DNA of 64,000 nt from Guillardia theta CCMP2712 (taxonomy: Eukaryota; Protista; Cryptophyta). This document shows positions 1,382 through 39,839 of this stretch, in pieces. A program made the translations under genes and the position numbers. The stretch is taken from NCBI RefSeq assembly GCF_000315625.1, contig NW_005434582.1, forward strand, positions 152,768-216,767, read 5' to 3'. The notes under the pieces are model-generated. The model searched no databases and was not told where the DNA came from. It was given only the letters and a program-made list of their open reading frames with translations. The stretch's first letter is position 1. The number at the start of each line of letters is the position of its first letter.

Positions 1382-4300
1382 TCCATCATCTCCATCATCG
1401 TCATCTTCATCTTCATCATCATCATCATCATCATCGTCATCATCTCCATCATCATCATCATCTCCATCATCATCATCATCATCCTCATCATCCTCATCAT
1501 CATCCTCATCATCCTCATCCCACTGCAAACAGACCTGTGCTAAGGGTGACACGGGAGCTGCTGCAATCATCGCACAAACTGCGCCCATGGAGTTTATGAG
1601 GAGGAAGACGTAGCCGGTGTGTTGCACCCAGTTTCCTTGGCAATCAAGTCAGGGCAAGATACTGAGGTCGCGGAGGAGAAACAAGGAGGAGGAAGGGGAG
1701 AAGGGGTCGAGGAGGGGGAGGGAGGGGGAAGAGGAGGAGGAGGAGGAGAGGAGATTATTCTGGAGAATATTCTGGATGAGAATGGAGCGAAAAGGCGAAG
1801 TAACGAACGAGCTGCGGATAGAAGCCAGACGTGGGAAGTGGAGGAGGGAGTACAGGAAAGAGAAGGAGGAAGAACAGAGTCCTGTGTGTGTAATTCGTCA
1901 ACTCACCATCAGTGTCTTGCTTGAAATATTCTCCGTAGCTCGTGTTTCCTTTCATCCAATCGCTGACAGACTGTGGCAACGAACAAAGAGAAACGGAAAT
2001 CGGAAGTGGAACAAAACGTCACATATCAGAAATAACAGCAAACATCAGAAGCAAAACAACAAATATCCGGACAAACAGCAGATATGAAGAAAAACAACAG
2101 ATATCATAACATACAGCAGATATGTGAACAAACAGCAAATGTCTCATGGCCATCGTGCTTCGCTTTCGCCTCCGCCGCTCTCACCGTCAGAATGAAGAGA
2201 CTCAAGTAAGTTCCGATGAACGACCACAGGGAATATTGCCAAGTATGAGGACCAGGCGGAGTTGCGTTCTACCATCTCGTCATCACAAACTTTTCTTCAT
2301 CTCCTGCCTATCCTCATGCTGCTGCTGCTGCTCCTTCCCCTCCCCCTCCCCCTACCTCCCCCTCCCCTCCTCCTCATGTCTACTCCTGTTCCTTCACTTC
2401 ACCTGTCCTTTGAACTTTCGGAGATATTTGCGCCAAAAATGCCGAAAACGTTTGCCGAGGGCTTTTGGAGCAGCAGGTGGGAGGTTGGAGTCCTTCTGCG
2501 AACCGATACTGACTTCACACGCAACCTAGCGAGAATGTAAGAGAGGAGACACGAAAATATTCAGAAGAAGAATGAGAGGCGAGACAGAGATTAGGAGGAG
2601 GAAAGGAAGAGAAGGGGGAGACGGGGGAGTGAAGAAGGAAACGATTGGGGGACAAGGGGACGGAGGACAAGAAAGAGTCGGAGGAGGAGACTGGGTGTAG
2701 CTGGAAGGAAATGAGTAACAAGAACAACCTGCATCTGCTCTCGTTGCTGTGTAAGTTGAATCCAAGACAAATTCGCGAGCTGCGAAAAAGCTTTAGGACA
2801 ATCACCATTGAAGGAACGAAACAGAGGATGAGGACGGAGGCGTGGAGGGCGAGGGCAAAGACAATCAGGAAGCGAACGAGCAACCAGGAAGGAGAACGAG
2901 TGGCGAAGAGAAGGAGGGAGGGAAGGAGGAGGAGGACGTAGGTAAGAGTCTAGGAGTGTCTGACCCTCAAGTGATAAGCCCAGTAGAGAGCGCAGGATCC
3001 TTGAGCGAGAATCTCCAAAACTTTGACGCTCTTGGACATCTGAGCGAACCCCTGGAGCACTTGTGTTAAGAGAGAAAGGAAAGGAGCCAAAAGGTGAGCA
3101 GCAGGATATGCCGGAGCTTGTGATAGGGCAGAGCGCAGAAACAGCACTGCACAAGGAGAGAAAGAGCAAAAGAAGGTCGAGGAGGAGGAGGAGGAGGAGG
3201 AGGAGGAGGAGGAGGAGAGCAGGAGGAGGAGGAGGAGGAGGAGGAGCTGGTTCAACCTGCCGGACGTTTGCAGACTGATTGCTATCGAGATGATACAAGA
3301 TCATGACCCCGATGACATGGTTCCAGAGAGGATGCGAGATAGGCACAGCCACACAGAAATCAAACATTCCCTGGAAGACAAACCTAAGATATGGATTCGG
3401 TACAGCAGCGACTTGAAGATCGTGGGAGCAGAGAGGAGGAGGAAGGGCGAGAAGAGGAGAAAGGACAAGAGGAGGAGGAGAAGAAGAAGTAGACAGGAGT
3501 TTCGAGAGGAGGAAGAGGGAGAGGGAGAGGGAGAGGAGGAGGAGAGGAGGAGAGGAGGAGGTGGTGGTGTGCTAGATTTTGACTTGAAGGTAAACGCTGA
3601 TGACAAGGGCGAGATAGGGGATCGAGAGGAGAATCTCGACTTGCTGCTCATCTTCTTACATTTGCAAGGGACAGACGAGCGTCAAACAAAGCTTCTCCGT
3701 CCCCGTCGGGTCTGCTCCCCTGCTCACACCCCACTCACGACGAAACCGCAAGCAGCTTCACGCACACTTACACCATCTCCTTCCCCCAGGTCGTACCAGA
3801 AAGGCTTCTGCTGTCTCCACGCCATGCCCGCGATCCCGCTGATAGCCAAACAAACATCACACGTCATGCCCCTCAAGCCGCACACGTCGCCAACCTCCCC
3901 TCGTCGTAACTGCAGACGTCGTCGCGCGCAACCTCCTCCATTGCCATGATGCGACTGCGAACGTCCTGCGACTTCACCTCATCGCGAGACCTCAATCAGC
4001 TCAACGCACATCGTCGCAGCTCTGCGAGTCCATTGCGATTTGCAGAATCAGATCGTGAAGGTACGACTGCCCGGACCATCGCAACCTGTGCAGATACAAC
4101 TGAGCGTCAGGACTTGTCCGCCGCAGATCGTTCAGCTACTTGTCCGAGAGATTTCTTGTGAGCTCAGCATGCTTGCTGTAAGTCAAGCATCAGTGAGTGG
4201 CCGACAACCTGGTTGCCGGCATCTCACCGGGCTTCGACGCCATGGGACTCTTCCGAGACAAGTCCGAAGGAAACTGTTGAGGATGTAAGAAATGCTATCA

Positions 4301-29495: not shown

Positions 29496-32400
29496 ATGAA
29501 GCCGGGCGAGTACAATCCAAATTATCATAATTCAAATTCATATTATGGTCCGATTCATGGGGGATTGAACCGGAACGAGGTTGGCGATAGCAACAATCAA
29601 AAGCGAGAGATGATGTGACTGTGTCTTGGTAGATGTCGATGAACCGAGCTAGTCATTCAGAGCATTATGTCTACACCAATGAAAATCACGACCTGCAGAT
29701 GATGAGGAGCTCTGCTCCTCCTCTCATTGTCGTGAATCCGGAGATGCTGCAAGATGAGGTTGTTCAGTCGAACTCGGCGCGCTTTTATCTTACATGTGCC
29801 CATGATGTGTTCAGGTGACCAGGCTTCAGAGCCTTCTGTCTGCAGCAACCAAGGAACTGGGAAGACAGATATCAACCAGCAAAGTAGATGTCAGCTTGAG
29901 CCAGAATGATACGAGGAAGGCCGAGTGGCTGCAGAAAGTTGTTTTACAGGTGTGTTGTGAACAGAACTCTGAATGTCCATGACGACCGTCTCGTGCGCAG
30001 CTTGAGTCAAAGCAAGCCTTGATGGACAGCAACCTGCGGAGCCTCCGTGATCAGAACACCTCCTTGTACCAGACGGTCGAATTTGAAGGGCTCTGTTTCA
30101 ATGATTGATCATTTTCAGTAGATCAATGAGCTGAAAAATGAAAACTTTGGTTTGAAAGAAGAGGTCGCAAGGTCATTGAGAACGTCTGGTAGTGGAGCGT
30201 CGCGAGATATGGAGGTGAGTGATTTGAAGCTATCGAGATGCGTGTCCTAAATGATTCCTCCAGGAGAAGGTTCGCATGGTCAAGGACGAGTTGGAGTCCT
30301 ATCGCAAAAGGGTATTGAATTCTACTTGTCGTCTTTGGTGTGATGTCCGTTGCAGTTTGAAGATCTTTCGAAACGCTACATTTCCATACAGGAGGTCAAC
30401 CGTGCACTGGAGCAGACTAAGGTAACAAGAGTGTGATTCTCGAGTTTTGTTGTCGTGTGACTTGAAATGTATCTTGTAGAGTCAGAACTACGAGAACGAC
30501 CAGTTCAGACTCAAGGTTCGTTCTGCGCAACATGAAGCTGTGGTCTAATCTGATTCGAGCAGGAAATTGAGTATTCAAACATCAATCTCTCAAAAGCGAA
30601 CTCCGAGCTGCAAGAAAAGAATGCTGCTCTTCTTCGAAAGCTGGAAGAACAAGCGGCTCAATTTGAAAAGCAGAAGTACATAATGATGCAACAAAGAGAT
30701 TCGTTGCAGCTCTCAATGCAAAAAGAAGTGGAATCGATGCGCAGAGAGCTGGTGGATTGGAAAACCAAGGCTGAGAAGAGTAGAGATTCATTTTCAATGG
30801 AGGCCATGCAGACGGCTCAAGACAACTCAGTACTTATCTCCGATTTGAAAGCCCTTGAAGCCTTGTACAAAGAATCTCAAAATAAGTTGGCAAGGGCTGA
30901 AATTCAGATATCGCAAATGATGATTTATGAGAGGGAAAATCACAATCTGATCCAAAGGCACGTCAAGAAGGATGTCACCATCTCTAAATGCAGCGCAAAG
31001 GTTCAGAGAGTGTCACAGAATCTTACATTGTTGAAAATGTTCGAGAGTTGGAAACGTTTGGCTGAGGACAAAAACCTTAACATAAGGGCTTTCTCCTTGT
31101 GGTCCAAACAAAGATTCCTCAAATTATTTCTGCATGACTGGCAGCTGGTCACTCAGGCTTCAATCAAGCAAATAGGTGACTTTCAGATGACAGCTGAGCT
31201 GAAGAAAGAACTTTTTATTGAGAAAGATAAGCGCAATCGCAGTTTCGTGAGCATTAGAAAGAATGCCGAGGCTCTGGGCAAGGAATTGGGATGTATTTGC
31301 GAAGAGTTAGTTGCGATCGACTCGTCGTTGAAAGAATCGAAACAATGGGTGGAAAACGTTGAAAAGAAGGCCCTGCAAGAAAGAGAGAGATTGCGAGATA
31401 GCTACGAAGGAAAACTGAAGTCCTTGGAGCTGACTCGTCTCGAAGAGGTGAAGAGACTCACTCTTGTCATCGAATCGAAGCAACAACAGTATCAAGAAGA
31501 GCTGCAAGCTGCCCTGAAGAGCAGTGCTGAGCTGGAGACGAGAGTTCGTCAAGAGTTGATGCAGGAATCCACTCTGAAGGAGAAGCAAGTCCAGGATCTC
31601 AAAGATGATCTTGCTAAAGCTCAAAGAGAATGGAAAAAGAAACTGCTGGATAAGGATCGAGAATACTCGTTGCAATTAGAAACAGTGGAACGTCAAAAGT
31701 TAGAGATAGAGGAACAGCACTACGAGAAGCTGCGTGCCAAGGAGAAGGAATGGGAGAATGAAGTGGAGAAACTCAGAATGCAGAGTGTTGAACTGGAGAA
31801 TGATCTGCGACAAAGATTCCAGGCCAGAGAGAAAGAATTGACAACCAAGGTTGAGAGCGCCCGACAGGAGTTGTCGAATGCACAGCGCGACTTTGAGACC
31901 GATTTGCAGGTGATTGCAATTGTCATTTTGTTTTCTCGTCACAAACTCACGATGATGATGTGTTTGTTTCAGGCAAAGGAAAGTGAGATGCAGGGCAAAT
32001 TGACCGAGAAGGACAAGTATTATGAGACATGGCTGGAGACTATCGTTGCAAATAGGCTAAAAGACTCCCAAGCACAGATGGAAGAACGATTGCAGTTCAA
32101 AGAAGAGCAACTCGTCGCCATCCGTAAGGAATTGGAAGACCAGAGAAAAGTTGTCCAGGGATTCGCATTGAGCAGAGAATCGAGAGATTCCGAACATTCT
32201 CGCCAGATTGAGAGGCTTGAGAATGAGATCAAGAATCTCTCGAGAACGTAAGTCTGACATGATTACGTGGCGGTGTGTCGTTGATCCTTGTCGTGGCAGG
32301 CTCGAGTCCAAGGCAGAGGACATGAAATCTCTGAGAAACGATGCGGAGGATCTTCAGAAGACCATCTCGGATCTCGAGAAGGAGAACATGCGGCTGGAGA

Positions 32401-34568
32401 AGCAGGTTGAAACGCAAGCGAGCGAGCTGCAGATCCTGGAGAAGCAGAAGGAGTCTCTCACCAACGAGCTCCTGTGGAAGGGAAGCCTGCCGCAGAAGAC
32501 CTTTGCTAACCAAGAGGCTGAGAACATTGAGATGAGGGCAAGAGTAGAGATGGGCGAGCAGGAAATCCTCTACCTAAAGGAGAAGTTGGCTGTTGCTAAC
32601 ACCACAAACGAAAGGCTGACCACCGACCTCTTGGATGCATCGAAGCTGCTGAAGCAGTACAGCGCTGATGCTCAGAACTTGTCGTGGGAAGCAAACATGC
32701 GCGAGCAAGGGGGTGAGGAGCAGCGGAATAGAATGGAGAGCTCAAAACGAGAGTCTCTCAAGTCGTCGGAAGGGATGGATCTCATCCAGAAGAAAGTGAA
32801 CTCGCTGATGCTGGAGAACGACACGCTGACAAACGAGATGGACAAGATCCTGCAAGAAAACTCGATGCTGAGGGCTGAGGTCGACGAGCTGAAGCAGCAG
32901 ATCGAAGACTTCCCTGCTGGGGCTCCCAAGTCCCGCAGCGGCTCCTTGATGCCCTCGCGGTCGTTCGGCATGTACTCGAGGAGGTTGGTGGAGAGAATGT
33001 TTGGGTCGTGGGTGACTGAGATGCTCTCCTCCCGCGTGAGCGGTCGCAAGAGCTACTTCTCCAACCTCCCCCCCATGTTGGACGCCAACGGCTGCCTGAC
33101 GCTGGACCTGACGACCACACGGCTGAGGAAACAAGACGTAGACATCAAGAACGAGAAGATCGGGAGCGGGACCTTTGCTGACGTGTTCAAGGGGGAGCTG
33201 AGAATCCAGTGTGCGGTGAAGAAGCCCAAGAGCCTGGGGAGCCACCAGGAGGTGCTGGAGTTTATCCGGGAAGGGGAGATGATGCGGATGGTAAACCATC
33301 CTTGTATCACCAAGACCCTCGGCATCCTCTGCGACCAGTCGGTCAGCGCCTACGTCATGGAGTACTTGCCGGGCAGCAACCTCTTCGACTACCTCCACAA
33401 GTACAACAAGACGCTTCTGTTTGGCAGGCAGGTGGACGTGGCGCTGCAAGTGTGCGATGCGATGGCGTTTGTGCACGAGCTCGGGATCATCCATCGCGAC
33501 CTGAAGCCTCAGGTAAGGCCGCTCCTCTCCCTCCTCTCCTCCTCCTTTCTACCCTGCGTCTTTCTTCCCTGCATCTACCTCCTCCCTCACCTCCTCCACC
33601 TCCTCCTCCCTCCTTTCTCCTTGCTTCTCACACCACCACCACCACCTCCTCCTCCTCCCCATCCTTCTCCTCATCCTCCTCCCCATCCTTCTCCTCACCC
33701 TCATCCTCATTAAATCCTCTTCCTCCTCCTTCCCACGATCTCTAACATTGCATGCAGAACGTCATCTACAACGACAAGACCGGTGGAGCAAAGCTCTGCG
33801 ACTTCGGGCTGGCCCGTTCTCTCCCCAGCGGTTGCAGTCATCTCGACTCCATCCAGCTGGGAACTGGAGGGACCCCCGCATACCAGGCTCCTGAGGTGCT
33901 TTCGCTCCCCTGCCAGCTGGAGTCGAGCTGACGGGGATCGCAGGTGCTGAAGCGCCTCCCTATCAACCTCAAGGTGGACTTGTACGGGTTCGCCATCACT
34001 CTGTGGGAGATGTACACGGCGCTGCTGCCTTGGAACGAGTGCACCCTAGAGCAGATGGCGACCCGAGTTGCCCTCTATAACGACAGGCCTCCGATCCCCT
34101 CGGTCCGCTACTCTCCTCCCTGACCTCTTCTCCCCATCGTCTCCTCCTCCTTCTCCTCCTCCTCCTCCTCCTCCTCCTCCTCCTCCTCTCTTCCTTCCGC
34201 CCTCCTGCGATGGCTGATGGCTGCCACAGGACATGCCCATTGAAATGTCGGAAATCGTTATGAAGTGTTGGGACAAGGACGCTGACGCCAGGCCCTCCTT
34301 CGCTCAACTTCTTCCTCCCCTCCGCAACATGCAAGAAACCTTCTCGCCCAGCTCCAAGATGTCCTCCGGATCCTCCAGCGGCTCTCTCGGCTCCTCCTCC
34401 ACCTCGAGCACCATCGTCTCCTACATCTCCTCCCAGCAGAGCCGGAACAGCCCTCGAACGAGCCTCGTCAACACGCGGAGCAAACCGCTAGTGAGCAACC
34501 CGCTAGTGAGCAACCCGCCGGTGAGCGTCCCGCGAAGCTCGTCCAGCGGATTCTACACAGCAAGATGA
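29496..34568 (+). CDS. Long coiled-coil protein with a C-terminal tyrosine-kinase-like (TKL) Ser/Thr kinase domain; multi-exon
   Basis: Motifs IGSGTFADVFKG, CAVKK, IIHRDLKPQ|N, LCDFGLAR, GTPAYQAPE, DLYGFAITLWEM and CWDKDADARPSF, followed by a Ser-rich tail. About 900 aa of E/K/Q/L heptads precede it. The start codon is tentative. Confidence 0.85.
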
Positions 34569-34675
34569 GCAAGAAAGTAGGACACAGAGAGGAACTGTCG
34601 ATGTGCTTTGAAAGCTTTACTGTACTTGTACCCAATGAAACAACAGGAAAACTGAGACCCTCTATACTTGACCGC

Positions 34676-37363
34676 CTACTCGTTCTTGACTTTTCGAGCA
34701 GTTTCAGGAGGAGCGCTGGAGAGGAGATCAGGAGTCAGAAGAGTAACAGAGAAACGTGCTGCGTGTAGAGAAGCAGGGCTAGGGAGGAGGGAGGTTGCGA
34801 GAGGTACAGGGAGGCAGAGGAGGAGGGAAGCGACTGACCTTCTAGCAAGACGATGGCCGATGGGATGAAGCACAAGGTCGACAAGGAGTCGAAGGTTGAG
34901 CCCGTTGAGTACCAGCATGCCGCTGAGAGCGACGAGGAAGAGGAGGCTGTTGGGGAAGCTCCCGCGATCCGAGTACACCTTGACTGTGAGCAGCGCGTGC
35001 CCTGCGATCCTGAACAGACCGAGCGATCCCCAGTGGAGCTTCTCGAGCAAGGGAGAGGAGAGGAGGGCGAGCTGCGCGATGTCGAGGGCGTGCATGAGGA
35101 GGGAGTGGACTTCAGAGAGGAGGGTGAGGCAGATGTAGGGGACCAGCAGCTGCTTGGCTAGGCAGATGACGCCGCAGCACAGGGCGATGGTGCTGCCAGC
35201 AACGCCCGACCTGGCAGAGGAGCGGACGTTGGCCCGGTTCTTGATGCCGTCAAAGAGGGACCAGATGCTGAAGCCGCAGGTCATGCTGAGGAGGAGGTTG
35301 CAGACCTGCCCTGCGTCGCTCCTGAAGGGGTTGCTGAAGCTCGAGACAAAGAACCCGACGAGGAGGAGGAGGACAGTCAAGAGGCTGTACACCCCAGACA
35401 CCACGCTCCTCGCCCACTGCCGCTGCTTCGCATCGTCGAGGTCCGTGTAGATCCGCCCAGCCGCCATGGAGGAGAAGAAGCCACAGGAAAGAGAGAGGAG
35501 GAGAAACAAGACGGACATGATAGGAACCAACCAAAGGGTGTTGATGTACTTGCCCCCTGCGAACCCTGCCACGAAGCACCACACCATGCTCATCGTGTTG
35601 GTGTCCAGGGCAGAGAACGAGAAGGGGGAGGAGGAGGAGGCGGCGGCGCGGCTGGTCCTGGCCAGCGAGACAGGCGACTTGCACCACACGATCTGGTAGT
35701 TGTGAATGAACTGCAGCTGGAAACCAGCTTCGCAGTAGCTGAAGTAGAACCTCCACTTCCTGTAGAACTCGTCCGAGTACCCCAGCTTCTTGATCTTGTC
35801 CTCCGCCCCCGTCCAGTTCTCGTGCCACATCTTGAGGGTCCGCGCATAGTGCAGGCCGATGTCTTCCACATGCTGGCAGAAGAGCGAAGAGTTCCTCGTC
35901 GCCCCCAGCATCGCCCCCATGGACGGCAGGTGGCCCCCAGGGAAGATATGGCGGCGGATGAAGTCAGAGCAGCGGCAGTACTCCATGTAGTGCTCGTCCT
36001 TGTATGTGATGGCCTGGATGACGGCCTTGCCTCCCGGCACCAGCAGCTGCTCGATCACTCCGAAGTACTCCCCGAGGTTCTCGTGCCCCACCGCCTCGAT
36101 CATCTCGATCGATACCAGCCTGTCAAACTTCCCCAGCAGCTCGGCCGGCAGCTTGCGGTAGTCGCAGAAGAGGATGGTGATCCTGTCGCTCATGCCCCGC
36201 TCCTCCACCTTGGCCGTGGCGTAGCTGAACTGTTCCTCACTGATCGTGATCCCCGTTACCCTGCACCCGAAGCGCTCCACCGCCCTGATTGCGAAACCTC
36301 CCCAGCCGCAGCCGATCTCGAAGATGTGATGGCCCGAGTTGAGTTCCAGCTTGTCGAGGATCAGGTCCAGCTTGTTGAGCTGGGACTGGTAGAGGGTGTC
36401 CTGTGGGCTGTTGAAGACGCCGGAGGAGTACATCCAGGTCTCGTCGAGGAAGAGCCTGTCAAATCCCTCCGTCAGCCTCCTTGCAGTTACAGCATTCCTT
36501 GCCCTGTCCTCCTCTACGTTCTCTACCTTCCCCGCTCACCTTCTCCACGACCTTCACTACTTCCTCCTCTTCCTCCTCCTACTCTCCTTCCTCCTCCTCC
36601 TCCTCACCTGTACATGTCGTTGCCAAGGTCATAGTGCTCGTTGATGTTCTTGAGCGAACCCTCCACCGTGTTGGCCCTGGCCATATGCGCCATCGTCTGC
36701 ACCTGAGTGCCGATCCAGTTGAGGACCCCGAGGCTCTTCTGCAGCGAGTTGAACTCTTCGACGTTCTGCGTGAGGACGTTTAGGAAGTTGGTCAGGTCGT
36801 CGGGCTCGAACTCTCCGTTCATGTAGCTCTCGCCCAGCCCGATGTCTGTATCCTTAGCGATCCGGTGAAAGAACTTGCAGTCGAAGACCCTCACGCGCGA
36901 GTGGTACACCTCCCTCCTCCCCTTCTTCTCGTCCCCTCCCTCCTCCTCCACGTACTTCTGCTCGGGGTTCCCGTACACCACCTCCGTCCCGTTGGGCATG
37001 ATCAGCCTAAGGGAACCGCGCTTGATCGCCCTGCCCGCGAACCTGTGGACGGAGGAGCAGACGAAGCGGGTGAGGAGGGGCATGTAGGGAGATGTGGGTC
37101 GAGGGACCCAAGGGATCATTCCGCCCATCTTCTCCACCACGTTGACCGCAGACTTCATGCCATCCTCGTGGAAGCCGTACCCGCACCAGGCTCCGCAGAA
37201 CCATGTCCTCTTCACGCCCTGGATCTTGTCGAGCGTCTCCTGCGACTTCTTGGAGGCGCCGGAGAAGACGGGGTGCGAGAGCTTGAGATGCTTCACGGTC
37301 TTTTCCTCTGCTGGGGCCTGTACAACATCGTGAGGGAAGCAGCGAAAAGAAGAGGGGGAAAGA

Positions 37364-37415
<52 letters not shown>

Positions 37416-38622
37416 AGAAATGTGCGAGACGGGAGAAGGAAAGGGGGGGGGGGGGGGGGAGGTGGCTTGGGGCGGTTTGGAGGTTGAGGCAGGAAAGAGA
37501 AGAGAAGAAGAGACGAAGAAAGAGGAGGGGAGGTAGTAGAGAACTTACATGAGGAGGGTTCAGAGTCACAAACAGATCGCCGGTCCCCTCAGGCAGACGC
37601 TGTAGCGAGTTGACCCAGTAGCTCACGCACACGGCGCGGTCGGAAGGAGCATCCTTGTTGAGCTCCGTCATATCCAGGCAGTTCCAGGAGGCCCACACTT
37701 TCCTCTCCCTCGGCATCAGGCTGGGGTCTCGGTGGAGGTAGACGTCGTTCTCAGCATAGGGGATGCCCTTGAGAATCGCTTCCTCCTCCTTGCTGATGTC
37801 TCCTCCCAAGATCTTCATCGTCACGTCCGAGTGGGTGGCGAAGATCACGTGGTCGAACTCCTCACACTTCCCCTGCTCGTCACGCACCTCCACCTTGTCC
37901 CCCTTGCGCACGACCGACCGGACGGCACAGCTGCTGCGAGCGTCCTGAAGGATCTCCACGACCTTCCTGACGTAGCTCCTGCTCCTGTCCTTGACGACCC
38001 TCCACTTGGGCCTCTCGATGAGCTCGAGGAGGTGATGGTTCACCCAGAAGCGGATCATCACTCGGATCGAGAACTCCATGCACTGCTTGTTGCTCACGCT
38101 CCATACCGCTGCACACATCGGGAGGAGGTACCAGTAGGTGAACCCTTCACTGTACCCCTCCTTCTTCAGGTACTCTCCCAGCGTCATGTCCGCGTACTGC
38201 TCCTCCACCAGCACCTTGGGCGCCTCCTTCCCGAACCGCAGCACGTCTCGGATCATGAGCAGGAACTTGGGGCTGACTAAGTTGCGACGCTGCGCGAAGA
38301 TGGTAGACAGGTTGTGGCTACCCCACTCGACCTTCCCGTCGTCCACAGACAGGGCGAAGCTCATGTCGCTCTCCTCACTGTCTACTCCCAGAGCCTCCAG
38401 GAACTGCTCGAAGTGCCCGTACGTCGTCCTGTTGAACACCTGGAAGCCAAGGTCCACAGGAACTCCCGGGATCGTCTCGTCTGTGAGCGTGTGCCCTCCG
38501 AAGTAGTCCTCCGCCTCATACAAGGTCACCTTCCACCCTGACTTCTGCATCAACCATGCTGCCGCCAGCCCTGAGATCCCTGACCCGATGATCGCCACCC
38601 TGCTGCCGTCTGCTCCTTGCAT
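34676..38622 (-). CDS. Fusion: FAD-dependent oxidoreductase (amine-oxidase fold) + cyclopropane-fatty-acyl-phospholipid synthase-type SAM methyltransferase + TLC-like membrane domain
   Basis: RVAIIGSGISGLAAA...YEAEDYFGGH, VDLGFQVFNRTTY and WFCGAWCGYGFHEDG; NINEHYDLGNDMY, EIGCGWGG, VSIEMIEAVG, IFPGGHLPS, HYARTLKMW and RKWRFYFSYCEAGF; then a multi-TM tail with LLSEVHSLLMH and LFRIAGH. Confidence 0.88.
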
Positions 38623-39839
38623 CTTCGGCCACAAGATCCGACGGTCTGCTGGCAGGGGGGCAGGGTCAGTACGACCGGAGATCAGAGGACAAGCGCTTGC
38701 TCAACAAGATGAGATTTGAAGAATACAGAACATTGAGGATGAGGGGAGCGCTTCCTGCTTACAACAGCATAACGGAAGCCAGCATGTCGGCATGTATCGC
38801 ATCGCGATGTTTGCGCTAACGGTGTTGGCATGCTAAGTGCCTCAAGGGCTACATCACAATGCTCTGGTGCTTCGCACCCACTAAACCATGCTCAGCACTA
38901 CAAGAGATAAGAAGATCGGTAGACGCTTTCGATCTTCGGCACTGCATCATCCGCCCCTTCCCTGATCCCACCACCATTCCCTGTCCTTGAAAATCATCTC
39001 AACAATCTCAACACAATCCTCTCCTCTGCTTCCCTCAGCTTGTGCTTGACCAACATTCTCTCCTATCCTGTACTTGACCCTATGTCACATCCCCTGTCTT
39101 CTACCTTCTCCTCCTCCTCTCTCTTTCCCTCCTCCCCTTCTTCTTCTGCGCGCATTGCCCGCTCTCTCTTTAAGTGTCCCCCGATCTCCACAGAGATCCT
39201 TCCAAGACCCTACCCCTCTAGTCCTACTCAACCACCCCACCCACCAATTCTCGTGAATAGGTGTACACCACCACAACAAGATCCGTGACTACGGACCCCT
39301 GCTAAATCCTTCAAGTACCCCCATTTCAATATCATATTCTACTACCCTACCCCTTCAACTACATCCCTCCCTACCCCACACACCCCCTCTTTCCCCCAAG
39401 TCCAACCTATAAACCCCTCAGGAGTACCAGATGTACCCCTACCCCCTGTTTTTCACTGCTTCGGTAGGGTACCTCTTTGTCCCGCATGATCATACAAGCC
39501 GTGGGAGTACCCCTTCAGGAAAAGGAAAATGGGGGTTAAGGATGAGGGGTGGGGTCCTAGAGTGTGCACGGTACTTACCTGTAGCTGGTAGTCAGATATC
39601 CATCAAAGTAGGGGTACTCTACACTAGAAAACAAGGGGTTACAGCCATCAGAGGGGTGAATCGAGAGGGTGGGGTACTCTTGGACCTAGGGATCTGGTAA
39701 CCCCCTGACTTACGAAGTTGAGTGGGAAGAAGGGGGGTAGTGGTCCAACATGCGGTGGGTCAGTGGATCTTAGTGGGGAAGAGGGTTTCACAGTGTACCG
39801 GGAAGTTGGATAACCGGAGTCCGGCGGCTCTTGGAAAAA

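What the first reader, a model, noticed from the sequence alone, without database searches (positions are those of the whole stretch)
34676..38622. Three-enzyme lipid-modification fusion: flavin oxidoreductase + CFA-type methyltransferase + TLC-like domain
Seen: the methyltransferase runs in one ORF (36433-34676) directly into a multi-TM domain with LLSEVHSLLMH and FRI motifs. Known: oxidase+methyltransferase fusions occur in plant cyclopropane synthases. In Rhodobacter a CFA-like methylase (UfaM) and a desaturase (UfaD) act in furan fatty-acid synthesis. TLC (TRAM/LAG1/CLN8) domains act in acyl transfer and lipid remodelling. Inference: a single-chain assembly line that methylates and desaturates acyl chains (methyl-branched, cyclopropane or furan fatty acids) and moves them between lipids. 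The TLC addition is an architecture I do not recognise as described.
Basis: partly seen in the sequence, partly recalled or inferred. Interest (0 to 1): 0.72.

Follow-up and report, generated by a model that had tools for sequence, protein, structure and literature searches.

The report
Algal lipid-modifying enzyme with TLC domain
A cryptophyte alga expresses one 1146-residue protein that joins a flavin oxidoreductase, a cyclopropane-synthase-type lipid methyltransferase and a ceramide-synthase-like (TLC) membrane domain. The same three-part enzyme is widespread in green algae and includes the singlet-oxygen-induced CFA1 of Chlamydomonas, yet I found no paper that describes its membrane domain.

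Summary
The window (Guillardia theta, GUITHDRAFT_165417) carries a four-exon minus-strand gene with ATG at 38622 and stop at 34676-34678. Intron-free transcript contigs from three studies cover all of it. The 1146-residue product has an amine-oxidase-type FAD domain, a full CFA-synthase (CMAS) domain and an eight-helix C-terminal domain.

The C-terminal domain is a true but divergent TLC domain:
- Pfam gives 20.1 bits, below the 24.6 cut-off, but over the whole profile.
- Profile-profile probability against Pfam-positive TLC proteins is 99.6%.
- The AlphaFold model matches ceramide synthases at Z 19.5-19.6.

The architecture is not unique. At least 43 of the 120 best oxidase homologues carry it, from cryptophytes and many Chlorophyta. 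One is Chlamydomonas CFA1, a SAK1-dependent singlet-oxygen-induced gene. A few are auto-named "TLC domain-containing protein". I found no paper describing the fusion.

Three of four residues needed for TLCD1 acyltransferase activity (H54, D98 and the acyl-accepting H117) are replaced here; the Glu, Arg and a His are kept.

My best reading is a membrane-anchored enzyme related to the bacterial UfaD and CFA-synthase genes, whose TLC domain holds or presents lipid rather than transferring acyl groups. This is a new variant of a known kind. The same stretch was noted once more by this scan (s1-430661).

The parts
37549..38650 (-). Exon 1: 5' UTR from at least 38650, ATG at 38622-38620, residues 1-358. 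The GxGxxG Rossmann motif starts at residue 8, so there is no room for a signal or transit peptide.
   Evidence: Transcript contigs X1/X2/X3; translation is a substring of P0056; Amino_oxidase and NAD_binding_8 hits
37318..37548 (-). Intron 1, 231 nt, GT..AG, CT-rich with a CTCCTG-type repeat. It stays in frame, which is why the mechanical ORF reads through it.
   Evidence: Joint skipped in contigs of X1, X2 and X3; sequence
36608..37317 (-). Exon 2: residues 359-594 plus two bases of codon 595. Holds the end of the oxidase domain and the N-terminal domain of the CFA synthase.
   Evidence: the HYDLGNDMY|R|LFLDE junction restores the CMAS consensus
36456..36607 (-). Intron 2, 152 nt, GT..AG, GGA-rich
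   Evidence: Joint in X1, X2 and X3
34839..36455 (-). Exon 3: residues 595-1134 (split codons at both ends). Holds the CMAS catalytic domain, the linker and the whole TLC domain in one uninterrupted exon.
34716..34838 (-). Intron 3, 123 nt, GT..AG, in frame (41 codons).
   Evidence: Joint in X1 and X3 contigs and in one raw RNA read of X20
34544..34715 (-). Exon 4: last 12 residues, stop TAG at 34678-34676, 3' UTR to at least 34544. It overlaps the 3' end of the convergent kinase gene.
37120..38622 (-). FAD/NAD(P)-binding amine-oxidase-type domain (UfaD-like), residues 1 to about 424, interrupted by intron 1
   Evidence: PF01593 E 8.4e-18, PF13450 E 1.2e-16. It is 45-47% identical to bacterial oxidases; for the two I looked up (P0147, P0165), the gene lies next to DUF1365 and CMAS genes.
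35690..37074 (-). CFA-synthase-family SAM methyltransferase, N-terminal domain plus catalytic domain, residues about 440-850, interrupted by intron 2
   Evidence: PF02353 E 3.3e-68; 36-37% identical to the bacterial operon CMAS proteins over 366-388 residues; invariant EIGCGWG and YCEA motifs in A5
34868..35614 (-). TLC (TRAM/LAG1/CLN8) domain, eight predicted helices, residues about 876-1124. The conserved Glu (residue 1043) lies in the LSEVHS motif. The stand-alone TLC HH dyad is replaced by Ser-Thr.
   Evidence: PF03798 E 6.4e-4, 20.1 bits, profile 2-196/198; hhalign 99.6%; model pLDDT 86.8; Z 19.6 and 19.5 to ceramide synthases; motif table

Best explanation
This is one expressed Guillardia theta gene (GUITHDRAFT_165417) for a 1146-residue, three-domain lipid-modifying enzyme. 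The first two domains are the plant and algal single-chain version of two genes of a bacterial operon: an amine-oxidase-type flavoprotein (UfaD-like fatty-acyl desaturase/oxidase) and a CFA-synthase-family SAM methyltransferase. Both act on unsaturated acyl chains that are already esterified in membrane lipids. The third domain is a divergent eight-helix TLC domain. I infer that it fixes the enzyme in an endomembrane, most likely the ER, because there is no N-terminal targeting sequence. I also infer that its conserved cavity (Glu, Arg and His kept) binds a lipid or acyl chain and holds it for the fused soluble domains, rather than catalysing the acyl-CoA-dependent acyl transfer of TLCD1, CLN8 or ceramide synthases, because the residues that reaction needs are replaced. 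Its homologue in Chlamydomonas is CFA1, which is induced by singlet oxygen. The likely physiological role is therefore remodelling of membrane acyl chains (methylated, cyclopropane or furan-type products) under photo-oxidative stress. Shown here: gene structure, expression, domain identities, conservation of the architecture and the residue substitutions. Inferred: substrate, product, localisation and the lipid-holding role of the TLC domain.
For: - Gene and transcript.
- Oxidase and CMAS domains.
- TLC homology: Pfam sub-threshold but full-length. 26 of the 37 sequences in alignment A1 (the query plus its 36 phmmer hits) match PF03798. hhalign gives 99.6%, E 2.6e-24 over 236 columns. The AF2 model has pLDDT 86.8. 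VIA-align gives Z 19.6 (rmsd 2.5 A, 227 residues) to yeast ceramide synthase and Z 19.5 to human CerS6, well above the next folds at 13.6. The atlas feature search gives TLC clusters at 0.90.
- Conservation: 43 TLC-bearing proteins of 1038-1179 aa among the 120 best oxidase homologues, in cryptophytes and Chlorophyta. Metagenomic orthologues have a continuous CMAS-TLC frame. Orthologue TLC domains straddle the Pfam cut-off at 20.5-33.3 bits.
- CFA1: CHLRE_06g281250 has a TLC domain at 923-1171 and is 43.7% identical to the G. theta protein over residues 8-1108. CFA1 is SAK1-dependent and singlet-oxygen induced, log2 fold change 5.92 (PMC4067076).
- Bacterial operon amine oxidase-DUF1365-CMAS-SDR around the closest bacterial homologues, the order of the R. 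sphaeroides ufaD-ufaO operon (PMC7380195). The Arabidopsis two-domain homologue was named AtUFAMD1 (PMC10940516).
- Catalytic residues: TLCD1 H54Y, D98N and E145K impair activity and H117 forms the acyl-enzyme (PMC11838012). In the fusions the H54 equivalent is Tyr/Phe (Ala in one cryptophyte-type sequence) and never His in the 43 sequences where it aligns. The D98 equivalent is never Asp. The H117 equivalent is absent in all five cryptophyte-type sequences and present in 20 of 39 chlorophyte-type ones. Glu is kept in 39 of 44, and Arg and His are mostly kept.
Against: - No biochemical or lipid data exist for any member with the TLC domain.
- The lipid-holding role is inferred only from retention of the domain and of part of its cavity residues.
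- Half of the chlorophyte-type fusions keep the acyl-accepting His, so some members might still transfer acyl groups.
- A domain that has lost catalytic residues could be a mere anchor.
- The mapping of TLCD1 residues rests on sequence alignment of distant relatives and on my reading of the cDNA printed in the paper.
- Docking of the CMAS and TLC domains could not be tested.
- Whether the methyltransferase makes a cyclopropane ring or a methyl branch cannot be read from sequence.
- The genomic DUF1365 (UfaO-like) hit is a single exon at 24.9 bits, just under the 25-bit cut-off.
Confidence: 0.55

Rival explanations
1. Assembly line with an active TLC acyltransferase. After oxidation and methylation of the acyl chain, the TLC domain transfers the modified acyl group, or loads the substrate acyl group, between CoA and a lipid or between two lipids. 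It would use a modified catalytic set built around the conserved Glu, Arg and His.
For: TLC-family proteins are acyl-CoA-dependent acyltransferases: TLCD1, CLN8 and ceramide synthases (PMC11838012). The fold and cavity helices are kept. The Glu equivalent to TLCD1 E145 and the Arg and His of the R-x3-H motif are conserved. 20 of 39 chlorophyte-type fusions keep the His equivalent to the acyl-accepting H117.
Against: In G. theta and all other cryptophyte-type sequences neither His of the dyad exists. No fusion has the Asp equivalent to D98 or the His equivalent to H54, and both mutations cripple TLCD1. CFA-synthase-family enzymes and UfaD act on chains already in phospholipids (PMC7380195), so no transfer step is required.
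Confidence: 0.2
2. Anchor only. The TLC domain is a degenerate pseudo-enzyme kept solely as a multi-pass membrane anchor that holds the soluble enzymes at the bilayer surface. It has no specific lipid-binding role.
For: Catalytic residues are lost. The TLC part evolves faster than the enzyme part: 41-48% against 63-74% identity among cryptophytes. Land-plant and several algal homologues work without it, with lengths of 845-1000 aa and no TLC match. The plant enzyme reaches lipid droplets without a TLC domain (PMC10940516).
Against: A plain anchor would not need eight helices. It would also not need conservation of the polar intramembrane Glu (39 of 44) and the Arg/His pair across two phyla, nor a fold still superposable on ceramide synthases at 2.5 A rmsd.
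Confidence: 0.2
3. Artefact. Two adjacent genes (a methyltransferase and a separate membrane protein) were merged by a chance open frame, or the transcript ends after the methyltransferase.
For: None after testing. A long ORF in GC-rich DNA can arise by chance.
Against: Single spliced transcript contigs in three studies span both parts. The same junction exists in more than 40 proteins from two phyla and in metagenomic contigs.
Confidence: 0.02

Closest known systems
Plant oxidase-CFA-synthase fusions (Sterculia foetida cyclopropane synthase; Arabidopsis AT3G23510 = AtUFAMD1)
   Same: Same order of an N-terminal amine-oxidase-type FAD domain and a C-terminal full-length CFA-synthase domain in one chain. 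The Arabidopsis protein is reported to be similar to both UfaD and UfaM (PMC10940516).
   Different: By my recollection the plant proteins end after the methyltransferase at about 865 residues. The plant protein localises to lipid droplets. The G. theta protein continues for about 280 residues into an eight-helix TLC domain.
Chlamydomonas reinhardtii CFA1 (Cre06.g281250)
   Same: Same three-domain architecture. Its TLC domain lies at 923-1171, and it is 43.7% identical to the G. theta protein over residues 8-1108.
   Different: It belongs to the chlorophyte-type clade, whose TLC domain differs (Gln-Tyr in place of the His dyad in Volvocales). It is known only as a singlet-oxygen-induced, SAK1-dependent transcript annotated as cyclopropane fatty acid synthase (PMC4067076). 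The passages on CFA1/CFA2 that I read there do not mention its TLC domain.
Bacterial ufaD-ufaO operon and UfaM of Cereibacter (Rhodobacter) sphaeroides, the furan fatty acid pathway
   Same: The closest bacterial homologues of the oxidase domain (45-47% identity) are encoded in the order amine oxidase, DUF1365, CMAS, SDR. This matches RSP1091-1087 (PMC7380195). The pathway is tied to singlet-oxygen stress, as CFA1 is.
   Different: These are separate soluble or peripheral proteins, with no TLC-type membrane protein in the operons I read. In R. sphaeroides the operon's own CMAS gene (RSP1089) is dispensable and UfaM is encoded elsewhere. It is therefore open which methyltransferase the algal domain corresponds to. 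DUF1365 is encoded elsewhere in G. theta, if at all.
TLC-domain acyltransferases (TLCD1, CLN8, ceramide synthases Lag1/Lac1/CerS6)
   Same: Homologous fold: Z 17.6-19.6, rmsd 2.5-2.9 A over 227-232 residues. The conserved intramembrane Glu and the Arg/His pair are shared.
   Different: No His dyad, no equivalent of TLCD1 D98 or H54, no Hox domain. The domain is fused behind two soluble lipid-modifying enzymes. Its nearest stand-alone relatives, which keep all these residues, are small TLC proteins such as those of Chlorokybus and Salpingoeca.

Membership tests
Plant-type oxidase-CFA synthase fusion (CPA-FAS / UFAMD) | N-terminal FAD/NAD(P)-binding amine-oxidase-type domain with a GxGxxG motif | tested here: met
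   PF01593 E 8.4e-18, PF13450 E 1.2e-16; IIGSGISG at residues 11-18
Plant-type oxidase-CFA synthase fusion (CPA-FAS / UFAMD) | CFA-synthase (CMAS) domain with a SAM-binding motif, in the same polypeptide | tested here: met
   PF02353 E 3.3e-68; EIGCGWG and YCEA invariant in A5; one transcript spans both
Plant-type oxidase-CFA synthase fusion (CPA-FAS / UFAMD) | Makes a cyclopropane (or methyl-branched) acyl chain on a phospholipid | not testable with these tools
   Needs lipid analysis or an enzyme assay
TLC domain (PF03798, TRAM/LAG1/CLN8) | Score above Pfam's gathering threshold | tested here: not met
   20.1 bits against 24.6, although profile positions 2-196 of 198 are covered. Orthologues score 20.5-33.3 bits, and four of the seven that gave a hit (nine scanned) pass.
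TLC domain (PF03798, TRAM/LAG1/CLN8) | Homology to bona fide TLC proteins by profile comparison | tested here: met
   phmmer hits down to E 3e-12 are Pfam-positive TLC proteins; hhalign 99.6%, E 2.6e-24
TLC domain (PF03798, TRAM/LAG1/CLN8) | Multi-helix TLC fold as in solved ceramide synthases | tested here: met
   Model pLDDT 86.8; Z 19.6/19.5, rmsd 2.5-2.7 A, 227-229 residues aligned; Foldseek TM 0.64-0.70
TLC-family acyltransferases (TLCD1 / CLN8 / CerS) | Acyl-accepting His (TLCD1 H117, CerS6 acyl-His) plus the Asp (D98) and His (H54) needed for activity | tested here: not met
   In the MAFFT alignment G. theta has Tyr, Ser and Ser at these positions. hmmalign shifts the dyad by one column, but no His occurs there in either alignment. 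Residue roles come from PMC11838012.
TLC-family acyltransferases (TLCD1 / CLN8 / CerS) | Conserved intramembrane Glu (TLCD1 E145) and Arg (CLN8 R204 type) | tested here: met
   Glu at residue 1043 in LSEVHS; Arg and His in FRIAGH
Furan fatty acid pathway (UfaM, UfaD, UfaO) | UfaD-type oxidase homologous to the operon-encoded bacterial enzyme | tested here: met
   45-47% identity to bacterial oxidases encoded beside DUF1365 and CMAS genes.
Furan fatty acid pathway (UfaM, UfaD, UfaO) | A DUF1365 (UfaO) partner in the same genome | tested here: inconclusive
   One exon on G000 contig C49 scores 24.5-24.9 bits against a 25-bit cut-off, E 1.9e-5. The full gene was not reconstructed.
Furan fatty acid pathway (UfaM, UfaD, UfaO) | Furan or 11-methyl fatty acids present in the organism's lipids | not testable with these tools
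   Needs GC-MS of G. theta lipids

The most novel reading that the evidence does not exclude
The fusion-type TLC domain is a new functional class of the TLC fold. It would not be an acyltransferase but a membrane-embedded lipid holder that lifts an esterified unsaturated acyl chain out of the bilayer and feeds it to the fused desaturase and methyltransferase. Together with a separate DUF1365 enzyme, this three-domain protein (CFA1 in Chlamydomonas) would be the algal route to methylated or furan fatty acids that scavenge singlet oxygen. That would identify the long-sought eukaryotic source pathway of the furan fatty acids found in fish and plants.
Probability: 0.25. Interest if true: 0.75.

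Novelty: new variant of a known kind. Interest (0 to 1): 0.55.

Why it matters
Furan and other modified fatty acids are thought to protect membranes against singlet oxygen. Their biosynthesis is worked out only in two bacteria. In plants and algae there are only homology-based candidates.

This work shows that the algal candidate differs from the plant one by a conserved, expressed TLC membrane domain. It also shows that the well-known singlet-oxygen marker gene CFA1 of Chlamydomonas is such a protein.

This gives a concrete, genetically tractable test case, since Chlamydomonas mutants exist, for two open questions:
- what oxidase-CFA-synthase fusions of eukaryotes actually make;
- what a TLC domain does when the residues for acyl transfer are gone.

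It also explains why the architecture has been overlooked. The domain scores on either side of Pfam's cut-off, so most orthologues are annotated only as amine oxidase or cyclopropane synthase.

Tried and rejected
- **Word-index search with the TLC part alone:** no hit at E <= 0.01, swamped by hydrophobic words.
- **Single-sequence AlphaFold model:** unusable, pLDDT 49.5.
- **Profile searches of A2 and A4 against PDB sequences:** nothing relevant. One calcium-channel gamma subunit at E 0.21, then none. The link to ceramide synthases is visible by fold only.
- **Foldseek alone:** weak E-values (0.045 and worse) although the top rows were ceramide synthases. VIA-align settled it.
- **Complex prediction of the CFA-synthase part (A5) against the TLC part (A6):** the first try gave no answer. 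This is no evidence either way, and I tried no other route.
- **Raw RNA reads of X20:** only about 6% of the run was read and few reads lay on the gene. They add one spliced read at intron 3 and little else.
- **Two separate genes or a truncated transcript:** rejected.
- **Ceramide synthase proper:** rejected (no His dyad, no Hox domain).
- **A second copy in the genome:** none at E <= 0.01.
- **Single origin of the fusion:**
  - The enzyme-part tree needs at least nine gains or losses of the TLC label, partly because of truncated gene models.
  - The TLC-part tree resolves a chlorophyte-fusion clade (100), a cryptophyte-fusion clade (97) and a looser stand-alone cluster (82).
  - One origin is therefore neither shown nor excluded.
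- **Cyclopropane versus methyl-branch chemistry:** not readable from the conserved CMAS residues.
Full report
**What is in the sequence**

The region is eukaryotic and has introns. The window lies on contig C92 of an 87-Mb, 669-contig genome. The encoded protein is identical to GUITHDRAFT_165417 of Guillardia theta CCMP2712.

On the minus strand, a mechanical ORF at 36604-38634 carries Amino_oxidase and NAD_binding_8 domains. A second ORF at 34676-36433 starts with a CMAS methyltransferase (PF02353, E 3.3e-68).

**Transcript evidence**

Assembled contigs of three runs from three studies lie on 38650-34544. They skip three GT..AG introns of 231, 152 and 123 nt, and no contig ends between the methyltransferase and the membrane part. 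The third intron is skipped in X1 and X3 and in one raw RNA read; X2's contig stops before it.

The gene therefore has four exons:
- 38650-37549, with ATG at 38622
- 37317-36608
- 36455-34839
- 34715-34544, with the stop codon at 34678-34676

The coding sequence is 3441 nt, giving 1146 residues. Each exon's translation is an exact substring of the public record P0056.

Searches were made exon by exon by reference. Whole-protein comparisons used the public record that the search tool returned.

**Is the C-terminal domain a TLC domain?**

The answer is yes, though it is divergent.
- In the context of the long ORF, Pfam showed nothing. Scanned alone, the domain matches PF03798 at E 6.4e-4 and 20.1 bits. 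That is below the 24.6-bit cut-off, but it spans profile positions 2-196 of 198.
- An exhaustive phmmer search found 36 relatives. Of the 37 sequences in the resulting alignment (the query plus its 36 hits), 26 match PF03798 on their own, with E down to 5.6e-32.
- A profile of the fusion-type domains (A3) matches a profile of stand-alone TLC proteins (A4) with 99.6% probability and E 2.6e-24 over 236 columns. This number is partly circular, because A4 was recruited with the query. The Pfam status of the A4 members I scanned individually (P0004, P0005, P0012, P0015, P0022) is independent of the query.
- With the alignment, AlphaFold gives a confident eight-helix model, pLDDT 86.8 and pTM 0.83.
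- The best structural matches are yeast ceramide synthase (Z 19.6, rmsd 2.5 A, 227 residues) and human CerS6 (Z 19.5). They stand clear of TMEM120A (13.6) and ELOVL7 (12.0).
- The language-model feature search also returned TLC clusters at 0.90.

**How widespread is the architecture?**

I searched with the oxidase exon and allowed long candidates. This returned many proteins of 1113-1201 residues.

A local search with the TLC profiles found a C-terminal TLC domain at about residues 870-1150 in 43 of the 120 best hits. Named sources are:
- Cryptophytes: Guillardia, Hemiselmis andersenii, Baffinella frigidus.
- Chlorophyta: Volvocales, Chlorella, Micractinium, Coccomyxa, Myrmecia, Symbiochloris, Raphidocelis, Haematococcus, Dunaliella, Bryopsis, Ostreobium and a pedinophyte.

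Homologues from Emiliania, Amorphochlora and Pycnococcus (about 950-1000 aa) lack the TLC domain.

Metagenomic orthologues show the same continuous CMAS-TLC frame. In one case the oxidase exon lies upstream on the same contig.

The TLC domains of orthologues score 20.5-33.3 bits against Pfam. This explains why only a few records are auto-named "TLC domain-containing protein" while most are called amine oxidase or cyclopropane synthase.

Full-text searches for cyclopropane (synthase) together with "TLC domain" found no paper.

**Link to Chlamydomonas CFA1**

The Chlamydomonas reinhardtii member is CHLRE_06g281250 (1201 aa). Its TLC domain lies at 923-1171, and it is 43.7% identical to the G. 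theta protein over residues 8-1108.

Cre06.g281250 is CFA1, one of the most strongly singlet-oxygen-induced, SAK1-dependent genes, with log2 fold change 5.92 (PMC4067076). The passages of that paper that I read treat it as a cyclopropane fatty acid synthase and do not mention a TLC domain.

**Relation to the bacterial pathway**

The closest bacterial homologues of the oxidase domain are 45-47% identical. They are encoded in the order amine oxidase, DUF1365, CMAS, short-chain dehydrogenase. This is the layout of RSP1091-1087 in Cereibacter sphaeroides.
- RSP1091 is UfaD, the desaturase.
- RSP1090 is UfaO, a DUF1365 protein that inserts oxygen to form the furan.
- The methylase UfaM is encoded elsewhere, and the operon's own CMAS gene (RSP1089) is dispensable (PMC7380195).

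The G. theta CMAS domain is 36-37% identical to these operon CMAS proteins.

Arabidopsis AT3G23510 is the two-domain plant homologue. It was named AtUFAMD1 on the same reasoning, with AT1G30130 (DUF1365) named AtUFAO1 (PMC10940516).

In G. theta a DUF1365-like exon exists on contig C49, but only at 24.5-24.9 bits against a 25-bit cut-off. A UfaO partner is therefore probable but not shown.

**What the TLC domain probably does**

TLCD1 and CLN8 are acyl-CoA-dependent acyltransferases. In TLCD1 the mutations H54Y, D98N and E145K impair activity. H117 is homologous to the His of CerS6 that forms the acyl-enzyme (PMC11838012). I read the cDNA printed in that paper and placed these residues as follows:
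- D98 in the GYFxxD motif
- H117 as the first His of the His dyad
- H54 in the xxHS motif of the second helix

In stand-alone relatives all of these are present. In the fusion proteins the pattern is:

| TLCD1 residue | Fusion proteins |
|---|---|
| H54 | Tyr or Phe in 42, Ala in one cryptophyte-type sequence, one gap; never His |
| D98 | never Asp |
| H117 | absent in all 5 cryptophyte-type sequences; His in 20 of 39 chlorophyte-type sequences |
| E145 | Glu kept in 39 of 44 |
| Arg and His of R-x3-H | mostly kept |

In the MAFFT alignment G. theta itself has Tyr, Ser and Ser at the first three positions. hmmalign shifts the His dyad by one column, but there is no His at either position in either alignment.

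Canonical ping-pong acyl transfer is therefore unlikely for this protein. At the same time, the polar intramembrane residues and the fold are retained across two phyla, which argues against a functionless anchor.

I therefore favour a lipid- or acyl-chain-binding role that serves the fused enzymes. An active but rewired acyltransferase and a plain anchor remain as rivals.

The protein starts directly with the Rossmann motif, so there is no signal or transit peptide. This points to a cytosol-facing endomembrane location (inference).

The first of the eight helices precedes the part that superposes on the seven-helix ceramide synthase core. It is shared with the closest stand-alone relatives. 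From the known ceramide synthase topology, it would place the upstream enzyme domains on the side where the cavity opens. This last point is also inference.

**Evolution**

In a tree of the enzyme part, the cryptophyte proteins form a clade apart from the main chlorophyte clade. The TLC label needs at least nine changes, some of them surely due to truncated gene models.

In a tree of the TLC part, three groups separate: chlorophyte-type fusion domains (support 100), cryptophyte-type fusion domains (support 97) and a more weakly supported stand-alone cluster (support 82). A single origin of the fusion is neither shown nor excluded.

**Verdict**

- The domain interpretation is right.
- The claim of an unknown architecture is softened. 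It is widespread and present in databases, but I found no paper that describes it.
- The acyl-moving role is doubtful.

I rate this a new variant of a known kind, of moderate interest, with a clear experimental route through Chlamydomonas CFA1.

Noticed in passing
window 32208-34568 (+): A protein kinase gene with CT-rich introns, read through as proline/serine-rich ORF tails. It converges on this gene. Transcript contigs of the two genes overlap at about 34544-34564, so the 3' UTRs overlap.
   Followed up: partly
window 30683-32251 (+): Long ORF (522 aa) with coiled-coil-like composition rich in Glu, Lys and Leu, directly upstream of the kinase ORF. It may be part of the same gene.
   Followed up: no
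L004 (G000:C140:88428-91985), ORF 1666-2670 (-): A second CMAS-family gene in the genome (PF02353 E 1.5e-33 on one exon). It has a hydrophobic N-terminal extension and no oxidase domain. It looks like the sphingolipid C9-methyltransferase type rather than a CFA synthase.
   Followed up: partly
L002 (G000:C49:469483-472740), ORF 1495-1671 (-): An exon with the DUF1365 core motif (24.9 bits, E 1.9e-5). It is a possible UfaO-like partner gene, split by introns.
   Followed up: partly
L017 4870-6012 (also L018, L019): In a high-GC metagenomic eukaryote, the three-domain gene is followed about 1 kb downstream by a separate 380-residue CMAS-only gene on the same strand.
   Followed up: no
P0015 (595 aa, metagenomic): A protein with two TLC domains in tandem: two matched stretches, PF03798 E 5.6e-32.
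   Followed up: no
window 36516-36659 and 37355-37423: Introns 2 and 1 hold GGA/CTC-type simple repeats. These attract pieces of many unrelated transcript contigs (depth spike to 106 in X1) and were skipped as repeats by the read tool.
   Followed up: no
P0086 (Chlamydomonas sp. UWO 241, 1062 aa): This homologue has no TLC match, but its precomputed Pfam list shows RING-type zinc-finger families (PF00097, PF13639, PF13920, PF13923). This may be a different C-terminal fusion or a merged gene model.
   Followed up: no
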